NCBI RefSeq assembly: GCF_031769215.1
Contig: NW_026782241.1
Location: 930,001 to 994,000, forward strand
Direction: 5' to 3'
DNA: 64,000 bases
Source of the DNA: Ylistrum balloti
Taxonomy: Eukaryota
The position numbers and the translations under genes were made by a program. The notes under the pieces were generated by a model, which searched no databases, was not told where the DNA came from, and saw only the letters and a list, made by a program, of their open reading frames with translations. This document shows, piece by piece, positions 155 to 27,400 of this stretch. The stretch's first letter is position 1. Each line of letters starts with the position of its first letter.

Positions 155-3100
155 GTAAGTCAACACAGCAGAGGCCTCAATCTTATAATGCCTCTTAGGG
201 AGGCTGTACTGTAGGATTTGATTTAATCTGATAATTTTGCTATTAAATGGAAGTGCCAAAAAAACCCAAACTGACCAAGTTAGAAATATACTGCTTTACA
301 TTTGCATTTCATTTTTTGAATGCTGAAAGTATTTCCATGATGTACATTTTCAGTGTAACAAATTCAATAAACTGACAGATATACATTAGCTGTCAGCTAA
401 CACTGTTTTATATATATCGGACTAGATGTGTACACTCCAGTGAGGTATTGCTCTGTTTTCCTTTTTGTCATTAATCTACTGTATCCTTGTGTTATAGGAA
501 GCGCCAAAAGTAGCTAACGGGATGTTTGAAGGAAATGCTCTGATTAAAGCATGCGGGAAGTTGGATCTGCTTTCAAAGATGTTGAAAAATTTGCATAAAA
601 ATGGACACAGAGTTTTAATATTCTCCCAGGTATGAAAATGGTTTCCAGTATTTCTTTTGATATTCATTTTTAAAGCTTATAAAATATCTGTCAAAATTTC
701 ATCTGTTTTATGGAATCTTGAGTTGGAAAAATATTAAATTTGAAACAAAATAACAAGTCTTGTGCATGAGAAATCTCTGATATGAGAAATGTCATTGTAG
801 ATACAGGGATGATAATGTAGAGGAATTTTCTGTTTACAGATGACCAAGATGTTAGATATTCTAGAAGACTTCCTTGAAAATGAAGGCTACAAGTATGAGA
901 GGATAGATGGTGGCATCACAGGAGCTATGCGTCAGGATGCTATTGATAGATTTAATGGTAAGAAAGAAAGGCTTAAATAACTTTGTTATATTGATAGAAT
1001 TAATGGTAAAAAAAAGGCTTAAATAACTTGGTTATATTGATAGAATTAATGGTAAAAATATGGCTTATATAACTTGGTTATATTGATAGATTTAATGGTA
1101 AAAAAAGGCTTAAATAACTTGATTAGAGTGGTCCAGCCGTTCAAAGCTGGATTTAATTGCATTACAGAAAATCATTTCAACTAAGACAGTGAAGAATTTG
1201 TTTATTTTATTTCAGAAGATATTTCTGGAGGAAACAGATTTCATACTCCAAAAATGTGTTTAATTGATTCATATTTTCAAATGTATTGATATAGTGTGAA
1301 CAATATGGAGAAAAAATGATAAAAATAATAATGTTGATTGTATGTGTTCACAGCGCCAAATGCTCCTCAGTTTTGTTTCCTGTTGTCCACCCGTGCTGGT
1401 GGTCTTGGCATTAATTTGGCAACAGCTGATACTGTCATTATATATGATTCCGACTGGAACCCTCACAATGATATTCAGGTAAAATTTGACTCCAGAAGAA
1501 AGTGACAAATCATTTTTAATAATTTTCTTGAATTGTTTTAAATTTGTTAAATTGTTCAAATATTTGTGCTAAAATGGTAACATGTCATGTTTGTACAATG
1601 GTGATAATGTAACTGTGGCAAATACATATAAAGATTAACAGATAAAAATAGAAAAAAATTGCCCTATACCAGGAATAAATTTCTGCTCTGACTTTTCCAC
1701 ATTCAATAACATTATACAGAAGACTCCAGTTAACAGAGAAATTCATCCTTAGGGGATATGAAAGGCAAATGAGTTGACTATCACAAACATTTTCTGGTAT
1801 ACAACTTCTATATTGGAAATGTTCATTCTTCAGTTCTGTTGAAATATATGTATCAGAGGTGTTCTGTTGACAATGAAAAATTGAAATATCATATTGCAGG
1901 CGTTCAGTCGTGCTCACAGGATTGGCCAGGCCAACCGTGTGTTGATCTACCGCTTTGTGACGAGAGGTTCAGTGGAGGAGAGAATCACACAGGTAGCAAA
2001 GAAGAAGATGATGTTAACTCACTTGGTGGTACGACCTGGACTTGGCAATAAGGGTGGTGCCATGTCACGTCAGGAAATGGACGACATCCTCAAGTTTGGC
2101 ACAGAGAAGTTGTTTAAAGACGATGATGATGGTAAGATAGAATATGACGTTATTGCATAAAGATTGAGTAGTGTTATAGATATCTAATTTTGTGTAAAAA
2201 AAAACCTCAATATTTTCTTTAAAAACTAATTACAATATGTGTATTCATTTGTGAATATGTATTTCAAGATGAAAGATAAATTTGATGATATTGTTTGTGT
2301 TGAATTAAAAACAATATGGATATTAATTTGTAAATGTGTATTTTAAAACAAAAATTTAGTGTGATAATTCTGTCATGGTTCCTGTTCAGTATGGTTGGTA
2401 GGGGTTTTAATTGTATTCATGGTAAAAAAAGATCCCTACCAAAGATTTTTACAAAGAATCAAAATCTTGAAAAAATAATTCCTGTTTCGGTAACGATGTA
2501 GAAACATGTGCAAAAGTTTGACTACTTTTGAACTTCACAACTCAGGATATTACAAAATATAAGGCCTGCAAAATTGACCGATTTACAATTTGATGTAGGC
2601 TTTGAGGAAAAAGGAAGAAAATAAAACGGAAAAGGAAAAAAATAGTGGTCACTTTCCAGTATGAGCTTCAGATGGTTCTGGATGTGAAATGACCATTTCC
2701 TTAATGTTTTCTTACTTTAATACAGTGATCACCTGTTACAATTGCTTAAATTACAAGTAGTTTATGGTCCATTTTGAAAGATTAGGTTATATATTTCTTC
2801 ATCTTTGATTTCAATATCAAAGAGGATCTCCGAAGAATAATGAATGTGATTTCATGTTACAGGTAAATCCGAGGAGGAACAGAGAATTGTATATGATGAC
2901 GCTGCTATAGAACAGCTGCTGGACCGAACCCAGGAGGGCCAAGAGGAAAAGGCTATGGCCATGAACGAATACCTCAGTTCTTTCAAAGTTGCTACCTACT
3001 CCATGAAAGAAGGAGAGGAGGTCTGTATCACAGCTATATACATGATAATATCTTGTATGGTTGATATATGGGTATACAGTCAAATCTGTCTATACAGGTC

Positions 3101-24457: not shown

Positions 24458-27400
24458 CTGCAAACACAATCACAAATATAGATATCTAACAAAGGATGAA
24501 AACATTGTACCTTTAGTGGAGACTCAAGTGAAGAGAAGATTAGTATAAAGAAAGTTTATGAAGAGGGGACCTAAAATAATTATATGCAAGGACTTCCTTA
24601 GTTACAACGTTTAGGAACAATTCATTTACTTTAAAGGACACCTTATTTATACATGTAGAGGAAACATTAGTGTATCTAATAAGAGATCCATAATTTACTT
24701 TTAGGGGAAACATTAGTGTACCTGAAGGGAGAACAATAGTTTATCTATAGAGGAAACATTAGTGTACCAGAAGGGAGAACAACAGTTTATCTATAGGGTA
24801 AACATTAGTGTACCTGAAGGGAGGACTACAGTTTATCTATAGAGGAAACATTAGTGTACCTGAAGGGAGAACAATAGTTTATCTATAGAGGAAACATTAG
24901 TGTACCTGAAGGGAGAACAATAGTTTATCTATAGAGGAAACATTAGTGTACCTGAAGGGAGAACAACAGTTTATCTATAGAGGAAACATTAGTGTACCTG
25001 AAGGGAGAACAACAGTTTATCTATAGAGGAAACATTAGTGTACCTGAAGGGAGAACTATAGTTTATCTATAGAGGAAACATTAGTGTACCTGAAGGGAGA
25101 ACTATAGTTTATCTATAGGGGAAACATTAGTGTACCTGAAGGGAGAACAACAGTTTATCTATAGAGGAAACATTAGTGTACCTGAAGGGAGAACTATAGT
25201 TTATCTATAGAGGAAACATTAGTGTACCTGAAGGGAGAACTATAGTTTATCTATAGAGGAAACATTAGTGTACCTGAAGGGAGAACTATAGTTTATCTAT
25301 AGAGAAAACATTAGTGTACCTGATGGGAGAACAACAGTTTATCTATAGAGGTAACATTAGTGTATCTGAAGGGAGAAGTATTGTTTATCTAAATGGGAAA
25401 CATTAGTGTACCTGAAGGGAGAACTATAGTTTATCTATAGAGGAAACATTAGTGTACCTGAAGGGAGAACTATAGTTTATCTATAGAGAAAACATTAGTG
25501 TACCTGAAGGGAGAAGTATAGTTTATCTATAGAGGAAACATTAGTGTACCTGAAGGGAGAACTATAGTTTATCTATAGGGTAAACATCAGTGTACCTGAA
25601 GGGAGAACAATAGTTTATCTATAGAGGAAACATTAGTGTACCTGAAGGGAGAACTATAGTTTATCTATAGGGTAAACATTAGTGTACCTGAAGGGAGAAC
25701 TATAGTTTATCTATAGGGTAAACATTAGTGTACCTGAAGGGAGAACTATTGTTTATCTATAGGGTAAACATTAGTGTACCTGAAGGGAGAACTATTGTTT
25801 ATCTATAGGGTAAACATTAGTGTACCTGAAGGGAGAACTATAGTTTATCTATAGAGGAAACATAAGTGTACCTGAATGAGAACTATTGTTTATCTATAGG
25901 GTAAACATTAGTGTACCTAAAGGGAGAACTATAGTTTATCTATAGAGGAAACATAAGTGTACCTGAAGGGAGAACTATAGTTTATCTATAGGGGAAACAT
26001 TAGTGTCCCTGAAGGGAGAACTATAGTTTATCTATAGGGGAAACATTAGTGTCTCTGAAGGGAGAACTATAGTTTATCTATAGGTGAAACATTAGTGTCC
26101 CTGAAGGGAGAACTATAGTTTATCTATAGGGGAAACATTAGTGTCTCTGAAGGGAGAACTATAGTTTATCTATAGGTGAAACATTAGTGTCCCTGAAGGG
26201 AGAACTATAGTTTATCTATAGGGTAAACATTAGTGTACCTGAAGGGAGAACTATAGTTTATCTATAGAGAAAACATTAGTGTACCTGAAGGGAGAACTAT
26301 AGTTTATCTATAGAGGTAACATTAGTGTACCTGAAGGGAGAACTATAGTTTATCTATAGAGAAAACATTAGTGTCCCTGAAGGGAGAACCATAGTTTATC
26401 TATAGGGGAAACATTAGTGTACCTGAAGAAAGAACTTTAGTTTATCTATAGGGGAAACATCAGTGTACCTGAAGGGGGAGAACTATAGTTTATCTATAGG
26501 GGAAATATTAGTGTACCTGAAGGGAGAACCATAGTTTATCTAGAGGGGATAAATAAGTGCAACTGAAGGGGCAACATTAGTTCACCTATAGAGAAACATG
26601 AGTTTACCTAGATGGGAAACATCACTGTACCTGAAGGAGCAACCAAGAGAATGCTATCATCGTCCATTATACAACATGACCCTCTCTTGAACAATGGGCA
26701 TTGATGGTTCATTCCAAATTATGGTGAGTTCCTTCACTGATTAATTACCTATTCTTTTAACAACACATACTCTATTATCACATCTGTTCTCATATGGTGG
26801 AGACATATACACCAACTTCCCATACATAAGCAATATTATGAGGTAGACAGAAAAATCTCTGTAAATGCTTCAGGACAAATGTTCTTTTGACGAAAAAAAA
26901 TACACTGAACCTCATTATCTTGAACTTAAAGGGAACTGAAGGAAAACTTTGTGATAGCAGAGTATTCAAATGAAGTGAGTTTGAATGTTTTGTGTCAAGT
27001 TAGGCATGGACCAACGAAATGCTTCAAATCAAACAGGGTCTTTGGTTATATGACTTGGATGTAACAAGGTTTGACTGCATATCTGATTTTACCTGAAGGA
27101 AAAACTTCGATCACATTGTCCACATTTGTAGGGTTTTTCCTTTATATGTGTCATCATATGCCGCTTTAGGCCAATACGATGAGCAAAGGAATTGTTGCAC
27201 AGCATACAAGTATATGGACGATTACCTGAAAACAGAATATTCATATTAAATTTTATCAATATAGAAGCAAACTTGAATTCAAAAGTACACAAGCTACAAT
27301 TAACAAACCAATGATATAAATAAATGAGAATTCAACAGCTAGACTTCCATAGTTCCAAACTGTTGACAAATGCTTTTGATAATCATCTGTGCTATTTATT

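What the first reader, a model, noticed from the sequence alone, without database searches (positions are those of the whole stretch)
941..26635. Recurrent 'splice-junction echo' minisatellites: introns carry amplified copies of the host gene's own 5' splice junction
Three independent arrays, in two genes on opposite strands, have units homologous to the adjacent upstream exon/donor junction (941-1121, 14246-14880, 24655-26635). A fourth (17555-18450) carries AGG|GTAAGT. In every case the donor-like motif is in the host's sense orientation. This could reflect a mutational process focused on 5' splice sites (R-loop or splicing-coupled repair, or reverse-transcribed splicing intermediates) or arrays of decoy donors. 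The null model is survivorship: duplications across an exon end are neutral if the first donor still wins. Tandem duplication of AG|GT-containing segments is an established intron-gain route, so these may be intermediates of splice-site turnover.
Basis: partly seen in the sequence, partly recalled or inferred. Interest (0 to 1): 0.75.

Follow-up and report, generated by a model that had tools for sequence, protein, structure and literature searches.

The report
Splice-donor-spanning minisatellites in Mi-2 gene
Two of the four repeat arrays really are head-to-tail copies of an exon end plus its splice donor inside a Mi-2/CHD4-like gene, but this is a repeat type already known from human and amphioxus genes, and in this repeat-rich genome its frequency needs no special splice-site-directed mutation process.

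Summary

- **Arrays 1 and 2 are real.** Array 1 (942-1125, 46 bp x4) and array 2 (about 14246-14900, 66 bp x about 9) are tandem duplications whose first unit is the authentic exon end plus donor. Both lie in one gene, a CHD subfamily II (Mi-2) gene on the + strand.
- **Their parent exons are real.** One matches human CHD4 residues 1078-1116. The other is conserved in a related species, whose orthologous intron (about 205 nt) has no array. Both arrays are unique in the 648-Mb genome.
- **Array 3 is not a junction copy.** Array 3 (24656-26635) lies mid-intron in a C2H2 zinc-finger gene, 455 nt from the true donor at 27093. It shares only a 15/17-nt patch with that junction and aligns along its whole unit with minisatellites on other contigs.
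- **Array 4 is a dispersed satellite.** Array 4 (17555-18450) belongs to a family on at least 10 contigs, and only 6 of about 32 motif positions read GTAAGT.
- **The architecture is published.** Examples are human F7 IVS7, IFI6, CBS, LMNB2 and PDGFA (PMC1557585) and amphioxus "mirages" (PMC3087553).
- **The scan has seen it before.** It already reported the same thing on other DNA of this genome.
- **No clear excess was found.** In 200 kb of unselected DNA, arrays fill about 20% of the sequence and 2-3 of 64 span a donor, against 0.6-1.8 expected. Genome-wide, periodic AGGTAAGT is no commoner than same-composition control motifs.

Survivorship plus minisatellite abundance is enough to explain the finding. 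No RNA data were available.

The parts
840..957 (+). Mi-2/CHD4-like helicase-C exon ending ...RQDAIDRFN, phase 1, with authentic donor ATG|GTAAGA
   Evidence: It aligns to human CHD4 residues 1078-1116, ending exactly at the exon end. Sequence.
942..1125 (+). Array 1: four 46-48-bp units. Unit 1 is the last 16 nt of the exon plus the first 30 nt or so of the intron. The three downstream copies read ATG|GTAAAA, a weaker donor (score 3.9 against 8.3).
   Evidence: TRF, copy dissection, unique in the genome. Reading on past the authentic donor meets an in-frame stop after 7 codons.
10718..11081 (+). Mi-2 CHDCT2/tail exon with donor CAG|GTAAGC at 11081, showing that the gene continues downstream
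   Evidence: Pfam CHDCT2, sequence, homologues P0001-P0041.
12211..12296 (+). Conserved Mi-2 C-terminal exon ([28 protein letters not shown]), phase 1-1
   Evidence: 79% identical to the related-species loci L005-L008.
14214..14306 (+). Conserved 93-nt Mi-2 exon (...[12 protein letters not shown]), phase 1-1, with authentic donor CAG|GTAAGC
   Evidence: tblastx match to L005/L006/L007. The orthologous exon and donor are visible in L006.
14246..14900 (+). Array 2: the exon tail plus donor reiterated about 9 times (66-73-bp units). Seven downstream copies keep GGTAAGT (scores 9.9-12.9) and the last unit is degenerate.
   Evidence: TRF, dissection, unique in the genome. The orthologous intron in L006 is about 205 nt with no array. 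An in-frame stop follows 11 codons past the authentic donor.
15379..15508 (+). Next conserved Mi-2 exon downstream of array 2
   Evidence: tblastx match 15402-15497 to L006 1969-2064, sequence. The 3' end of this exon is not resolved.
17555..18450 (+). Array 4: a member of a dispersed 36-40-bp satellite family with GGGTTA-type motifs. It is not a junction copy.
   Evidence: 56 matches on at least 10 other contigs. GGGTAAGT occurs in 6 positions against 26 other variants. It clusters with an array in L024.
24656..26635 (-). Array 3: 46 bp x about 43, mid-intron in the zinc-finger gene. In gene sense each unit reads pyrimidine tract-CAG|GTACAC, a weak donor (score 5.6) that looks more like an acceptor.
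   Evidence: TRF. The unit aligns along its length with the arrays in L001 and L002.
27093..27225 (-). C2H2 zinc-finger exon with the true donor CAG|GTAAAA at 27093. Its finger is completed by the exon starting at 24457.
   Evidence: Pfam zf-C2H2.
24073..24457 (-). Last coding exon of the zinc-finger gene
26890..27092 (.). High-copy dispersed element of about 190 nt lying directly after the zinc-finger donor, between the junction and array 3
   Evidence: 245 candidates, 40 of them scored at 74-83% identity.

Best explanation
Arrays 1 and 2 are ordinary boundary-spanning minisatellites of the 'mirage' or F7-IVS7 type.

How they arose (inferred): a short tandem duplication, by replication slippage or unequal exchange, happened to include the last 16 nt (array 1) or about 61 nt (array 2) of a Mi-2 exon plus the donor and the first intron bases. 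The duplication then expanded downstream into the intron.

Why they are tolerated (inferred): the authentic, most upstream donor keeps its exonic context, so the mRNA is unchanged. Any use of a downstream copy would meet an in-frame stop within 7-11 codons, giving a truncated or NMD-targeted transcript.

Shown here: the anatomy, the reality of the exons, uniqueness in the genome, the lineage-specific origin of array 2, and the in-frame stops.

Not shown: which donor is actually used, and the mutational route.

Arrays 3 and 4 are unrelated intronic or flanking minisatellites from dispersed families, and their donor-like motifs are incidental.

The apparent recurrence reflects how rich this genome is in minisatellites (about 18-20% of sampled DNA), not a process aimed at 5' splice sites.
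For: - First unit equals the authentic junction.
- Exons are real: CHD4 alignment and conservation in L005-L007.
- Arrays 1 and 2 are unique in the genome.
- The orthologous intron in the related species lacks an array.
- In-frame stops follow the authentic donors.
- The junction phase within units varies.
- Unselected 200 kb: 64 independent arrays, of which L025:752 (AAA-ATPase exon, PF00004 E=8e-8) and L028:3091 (DNA-PKcs exon, PF20500 E=8e-15) are donor-spanning, and L011:472 is possible. A positional null expects 0.6-1.8.
- Genome-wide periodic AGGTAAGT gives 6726 matches, against 393-6599 for seven same-composition controls. Normalised, it ranks third of eight, and the estimated array numbers (about 400) equal those of two of four controls.
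- Published precedent shows the most upstream donor wins and the pseudo-sites stay silent (PMC1557585). The 'mirage' class is described in PMC3087553.
Against: - No RNA run exists for this organism in the index, so donor choice is untested.
- A modest excess cannot be excluded. Donor-like 9-mers scoring 7 or more occur in 18 of 64 sample arrays, against 10.3 +/- 2.5 after dinucleotide-preserving shuffles. For scores of 9 or more the count is 5, against 1.6 in random genomic segments (P=0.03) and 3.0 after dinucleotide shuffles (P=0.15).
- Window and sample together hold 4-5 junction-spanning arrays of 80, against roughly 1-2.3 expected.
- The sample comes from a single contig, and the donor density used in the null is assumed from general knowledge, not measured.
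- Several array-2 decoys are as strong as, or stronger than, the authentic site, so silent decoys are assumed from the human F7 work, not shown here.
Confidence: 0.8

Rival explanations
1. A mutational process focused on 5' splice sites (R-loops, splicing-coupled repair, or reverse-transcribed splicing intermediates) seeds tandem arrays preferentially at exon-donor junctions.
For: - Two junction-spanning arrays lie in one gene in the window.
- Two to three more occur in 200 kb of unselected DNA.
- Donor-like motifs show a weak excess in array units after dinucleotide control: 18 against 10.3 at score 7 or more.
- Earlier scan notes report more cases in this genome (those are leads only).
Against: - The junction sits at arbitrary places within the units.
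- Genome-wide, periodic AGGTAAGT is not above same-composition control motifs.
- Strong donors (score 9 or more) are not significantly enriched after dinucleotide control.
- The counts are compatible with a positional null, with P(>=2) between 0.13 and 0.55.
- Arrays 3 and 4, which were counted as support, are not junction copies.
Confidence: 0.1
2. The reiterated donors are selected functional elements: decoy or back-up donors, or intronic U1 snRNP landing pads, that tune Mi-2 splicing or feed an NMD switch.
For: - All seven downstream array-2 copies keep an intact GGTAAGT.
- The parent exon is a symmetric 93-nt cassette-type exon.
- In human IFI6 and CBS, proximal pseudo-sites are used (PMC1557585).
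Against: - The array is absent from the orthologous intron of the related species, so it is young.
- Array-1 copies have weakened donors, 3.9 against 8.3.
- With 85% unit identity, an invariant 9-nt run is not statistically remarkable. This is my estimate and was not formally tested.
- Every alternative use gives a premature stop.
- There are no RNA data.
Confidence: 0.07
3. All four arrays are pieces of dispersed satellites or mobile elements that merely landed next to exons.
For: This is true for array 4 and probably for array 3. A high-copy element also sits beside the zinc-finger donor.
Against: Arrays 1 and 2 have no other match in the 648-Mb genome. Their first unit is conserved coding sequence.
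Confidence: 0.03

Closest known systems
Human F7 IVS7 37-bp VNTR, with related cases in IFI6 (6-16), CBS IVS13, LMNB2 and PDGFA intron 4 (Borensztajn et al. 2006, PMC1557585)
   Same: It is a minisatellite whose first monomer spans an exon-intron boundary, so the authentic donor is followed by a row of identical or near-identical pseudo-donors in the same orientation. The unit sizes are similar (12-100 bp) and it lies in a pre-existing intron.
   Different: The organism and the host gene (Mi-2) differ. Here the exonic share of the unit is larger (16 and about 61 nt, against 4 nt in F7). Splicing behaviour is untested here. Array-1 copies carry a weakened donor.
Amphioxus 'mirage' minisatellites (Adh3; globin genes BflGb6 and BflGb9; PMC3087553)
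   Same: They are tandem duplications of exon-intron boundaries in an invertebrate. The units carry AG/GT signals, regular splicing is apparently unaffected, the phenomenon is described as possibly general in that lineage, and it has been discussed as a route to intron gain.
   Different: Mirages are reported on both acceptor and donor sides, and I verified only donor-side cases here. Somatic and allelic length instability is shown for mirages and not tested here.
Intron gain by tandem duplication of an AGGT-containing exon segment (Rogers model; PMC3265369, PMC4974935)
   Same: A tandem duplication carries an AG|GT.
   Different: In that model the duplication lies within an exon and creates a new intron. 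Here the introns pre-exist: the orthologous intron is present in the related species. The copies lie inside the intron, so no intron has been gained.

Membership tests
Boundary-spanning ('mirage' / F7-IVS7 type) minisatellite | Head-to-tail array of three or more minisatellite-sized units | tested here: met
   Array 1 has 46 bp x4.0 at 90% matches. Array 2 has 66 bp x5.8 in the core, about 9 units in all.
Boundary-spanning ('mirage' / F7-IVS7 type) minisatellite | The first monomer contains the authentic exon-intron boundary of a real exon | tested here: met
   Array 1: the exon matches CHD4 residues 1078-1116 and ends at the junction inside unit 1. Array 2: the exon is conserved in L005-L007, with the same donor position.
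Boundary-spanning ('mirage' / F7-IVS7 type) minisatellite | The donor signal is reiterated in the downstream monomers, in gene sense | tested here: met
   Array 1 has 3 x ATG|GTAAAA. Array 2 has 7 x (C/T)AG or ATG|GTAAGT.
Boundary-spanning ('mirage' / F7-IVS7 type) minisatellite | The authentic (most upstream) site is used, and the pseudo-sites are silent or minor | not testable with these tools
   No RNA run is indexed for this organism.
Boundary-spanning ('mirage' / F7-IVS7 type) minisatellite | Copy-number instability or polymorphism (VNTR behaviour) | not tested
Only indirect evidence exists: the array is absent from the related species' intron.
Boundary-spanning minisatellite, as claimed for array 3 | Array contiguous with, and homologous to, the authentic junction | tested here: not met
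   455 nt separate the array from the donor at 27093. About 250 nt of that is unique sequence, even after discounting the inserted repeat. Only 15/17 nt are shared with the junction. The unit aligns with arrays on C108 and C152.
Boundary-spanning minisatellite, as implied for array 4 | Unit derived from a local junction and not dispersed | tested here: not met
   The family is present on at least 10 contigs, and GTAAGT is a minority variant.
Intron gain by AGGT tandem duplication | The duplication creates an intron absent from relatives | tested here: not met
   The orthologous intron is present in the related species at the same exon end. The arrays lie within existing introns.

The most novel reading that the evidence does not exclude
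In this minisatellite-rich genome, donor-spanning arrays may be about 2-3 fold over-represented relative to a positional null, with thousands of genes carrying reiterated donors. That would imply either a junction-biased duplication or expansion process, or selection favouring reiterated U1-binding sites. It would also offer a natural genome-scale experiment on 5' splice-site choice.
Probability: 0.15. Interest if true: 0.55.

Novelty: new member of a known kind. Interest (0 to 1): 0.25.

Why it matters
Taken as individual loci, these are further examples of a published repeat type, so little changes.

What is mildly useful is the scale. If my single-contig sample is representative, arrays occur about once per 3 kb and 3-5% of them reiterate a donor. 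That would mean several thousand genes in this animal carry rows of pseudo-donors. Such loci would be a ready-made resource for testing the rule that the upstream-most donor wins, and the duplication model of intron and exon birth, outside mammals.

There is also a practical point. Such arrays can mislead gene predictors and splice-aware aligners.

Tried and rejected
**RNA evidence.** The look-up of sequencing runs returned only one run, not on record as RNA.

**Misleading early signals.**
- Donor-like motifs looked 3-fold enriched in array units against random segments and mononucleotide shuffles. The excess shrank to 1.7-fold after dinucleotide-preserving shuffles and lost significance for strong donors.
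- The first genome-wide pattern count looked 7.6-fold above its reversed control. Six more same-composition controls spanned 393-6599 matches, which removed the effect.

**Checks that did not pan out.**
- Could the 455-nt spacer before array 3 be an insertion that split an originally contiguous array? Only about 200 nt of it is a dispersed element, so I rejected this.
- L027:3256 (a Cys-loop receptor exon, PF02931) looked like another junction case, but the exon ends about 57 nt upstream of the array.
- L011:472 has a good donor and an open frame but no Pfam support, so I left it as 'possible'.

**Not done.**
- I built no spliced Mi-2 model.
- Acceptor-spanning and antisense classes could not be counted without an annotation.
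- I did not verify the organism myself. Earlier notes call it a scallop.
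Full report
**Setting**

The window is G000:C384:930001-994000 of a 648.5-Mb animal genome with about 35% GC. The + strand from position 1 carries a CHD subfamily II (Mi-2/CHD3-5) gene. Pfam finds SNF2-rel_dom, DUF1087 and CHDCT2, and exon 840-956 aligns to human CHD4 residues 1078-1116. 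The - strand between about 24073 and 32229 carries a C2H2 zinc-finger gene.

**Array 1 (942-1125)**

- The helicase exon ends at 957 (...DAIDRFN, phase 1) with donor ATG|GTAAGA.
- The first 48-bp unit starts 16 nt before that junction and is followed by three 46-bp copies.
- The unit-versus-junction alignment scores 92, against a background maximum of 33.
- The copies read ATG|GTAAAA, which is a weaker donor (PWM score 3.9 against 8.3).
- Reading on from the authentic junction meets a stop after 7 codons.
- The array has no other match in the genome.

**Array 2 (about 14246-14900)**

It was not obvious that 14214-14306 is an exon, because the last CHDCT2 exon runs into a stop at 11108. Several results settle the question.

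- That exon has a good donor at 11081.
- The candidate exons 12211-12296 and 14214-14306 both join it in phase 1 with open frames.
- Genomic ORF fragments from a related species (P0030) and their contigs L005-L008 show all three exons conserved, together with a further exon from 15379.
- In L006 the orthologous exon ends ...CCCCAG|GTAAGT. The following intron is only about 205 nt and holds no tandem repeat.

Array 2 is therefore a lineage-specific expansion of the last 61 nt or so of a conserved coding exon plus its donor.

- Seven downstream copies keep GGTAAGT, with scores of 9.9-12.9 against 12.3 for the authentic CAG|GTAAGC.
- An in-frame stop follows 11 codons after the authentic junction.
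- The array is unique in the genome.

I searched the exons one at a time and built no joined model.

**Array 3 (24656-26635, - strand)**

The finger YKCGQCDRSFSFR|SKLTDHMTMH is split between the exon ending at 27093 (CAG|GTAAAA) and the exon starting at 24457. So the array lies in the middle of that intron, 455 nt from the donor.

- About 200 nt next to the donor is a high-copy dispersed element. The remaining 250 nt or so is unique, so the array was never contiguous with the junction.
- Similarity to the junction is limited to 15 of 17 nt, with empirical p about 0.0025 per comparison before multiple testing.
- The 46-bp unit aligns along nearly its whole length with a 48-bp array on C108 and a 43-bp array on C152. 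At the 'donor' position those relatives read CCTACAAC and CAGATACA.
- In gene sense the unit looks more like an acceptor (a pyrimidine tract followed by CAG) than a donor (score 5.6).

I conclude that array 3 is not a junction echo.

**Array 4 (17555-18450)**

It matches arrays on at least 10 other contigs. GGGTAAGT is a minority variant, with 6 occurrences against 9 GGGTTAGT and 15 GGGTTATT.

**Is there a general excess?**

No RNA run is indexed, and no annotation is available. I therefore used tests that need no annotation.

*(a) Sample of unselected DNA.* I took 200 kb at fixed offsets on contig C108, which yielded 64 arrays, all in independent families. Arrays cover about 20% of that DNA.

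| Donor-like 9-mer score | Arrays observed (of 64) | Random genomic segments | Mononucleotide shuffles | Dinucleotide shuffles |
|---|---|---|---|---|
| 7 or more | 18 | 5.9 | 6.8 | 10.3 +/- 2.5 |
| 9 or more | 5 | 1.6 (P=0.03) | 2.1 | 3.0 (P=0.15) |

I then inspected the strongest arrays.

- L025:752-1487 (45 bp x16, CAG|GTATGT) starts 7 nt before the end of an AAA-ATPase Walker-A exon (PF00004, E=8e-8).
- L028:3091-4077 (30 bp x33, CAG|GTAAGT) starts 18 nt before the end of a DNA-PKcs exon (PF20500, E=8e-15).
- L011:472 is possible but unsupported.
- L027:3256 lies 57 nt downstream of a Cys-loop receptor exon and is not junction-spanning.

With 2304 nt of summed unit length, and donor densities of 2.7-8e-4 per bp (assumed from typical animal gene counts), a positional null expects 0.6-1.8 donor-spanning arrays. 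P(>=2) is then 0.13-0.55.

*(b) Genome-wide pattern counts.* I counted three periodic copies of an 8-mer at 16-46-nt spacing.

| Motif | Matches |
|---|---|
| AGGTAAGT (donor) | 6726 |
| AGTGTAGA | 6599 |
| AGTGATAG | 4561 |
| AGATGTGA | 3732 |
| GATAGTGA | 3252 |
| TGAATGGA | 886 |
| GAGTTGAA | 420 |
| AAGTTGAG | 393 |

When normalised by background frequency in non-array DNA, the donor motif ranks third of eight. Its estimated array number (about 400) equals that of two of the four controls I could estimate.

So no excess beyond about 2-fold is visible.

**Literature**

The architecture is explicitly described for human F7 IVS7, IFI6, CBS, LMNB2 and PDGFA. Experiments in that work show that the most upstream donor is chosen and the pseudo-sites stay silent unless the authentic site is mutated (PMC1557585). 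In amphioxus the same structures are called 'mirages' and have already been tied to intron gain by AG/GT duplication (PMC3087553; see also PMC3265369 and PMC4974935).

Earlier notes of this scan report the same repeat type in other genes of this genome. I used them only as leads and verified the literature claim myself.

**Verdict**

Two real new instances of a known repeat type lie in one gene, and two of the claimed arrays do not belong to it. A modest genome-wide excess of 2-3 fold or less cannot be excluded with the data I could obtain.

**Limits**

- The genome sample was capped at 200 kb, all from one contig.
- The donor PWM uses general metazoan frequencies from established knowledge, not values trained on this species.

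Noticed in passing
window 26890-27092: A dispersed element of about 190 nt lies immediately after the zinc-finger donor. It has at least 245 candidate copies genome-wide, of which 40 were scored at 74-83% identity. It contains AAGTTTTCCTTCAG, which resembles the exon end 150 nt upstream.
   Followed up: partly
L009-L028 (C108 sample) and the window: Tandem arrays of period 15-200 fill about 20% of the 200-kb sample, about one array per 3 kb, and 8% of the window. The 64 sampled arrays fall into 64 different families. The genome is unusually rich in minisatellites.
   Followed up: partly
L025:752-1487 and L028:3091-4077: Two further donor-spanning arrays turned up in unselected DNA. One has 45 bp x16 after an AAA-ATPase Walker-A exon. 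The other has 30 bp x33 after a DNA-PKcs N-terminal exon.
   Followed up: yes
L027:3256-4100 (- strand): An intronic array of about 60-bp units starts 57 nt downstream of a Cys-loop receptor ligand-binding exon (PF02931, E=4e-25). Its units carry AACAG|GTGTGA in gene sense but are not contiguous with the junction. This is the same situation as array 3.
   Followed up: partly
window 17555-18450; L024:7967-10000; C17:465455; C15:83437: The array-4 family and several other arrays share GGGTTA or TAGGGTTA motifs, which resemble the TTAGGG telomere repeat, next to GGATTG(T/A). This may be a large dispersed satellite superfamily.
   Followed up: no
window 11081-11110, 12296 and 14306: Each of three consecutive phase-1 Mi-2 tail exons is followed by an in-frame stop shortly after its donor. 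Intron retention or exon skipping would therefore give alternative C-termini, as another first-reader note suggested.
   Followed up: partly
window 30954-31290 (- strand): A 39-bp x8.6 repeat lies inside the large zinc-finger coding exon and encodes a repeated 13-residue motif (…QPFLQSPMVT…).
   Followed up: no
window 19196-19811: A 33-bp x19 array lies downstream of the Mi-2 tail exons. It has no strong donor motif and its gene context is unresolved.
   Followed up: no
   Followed up: no
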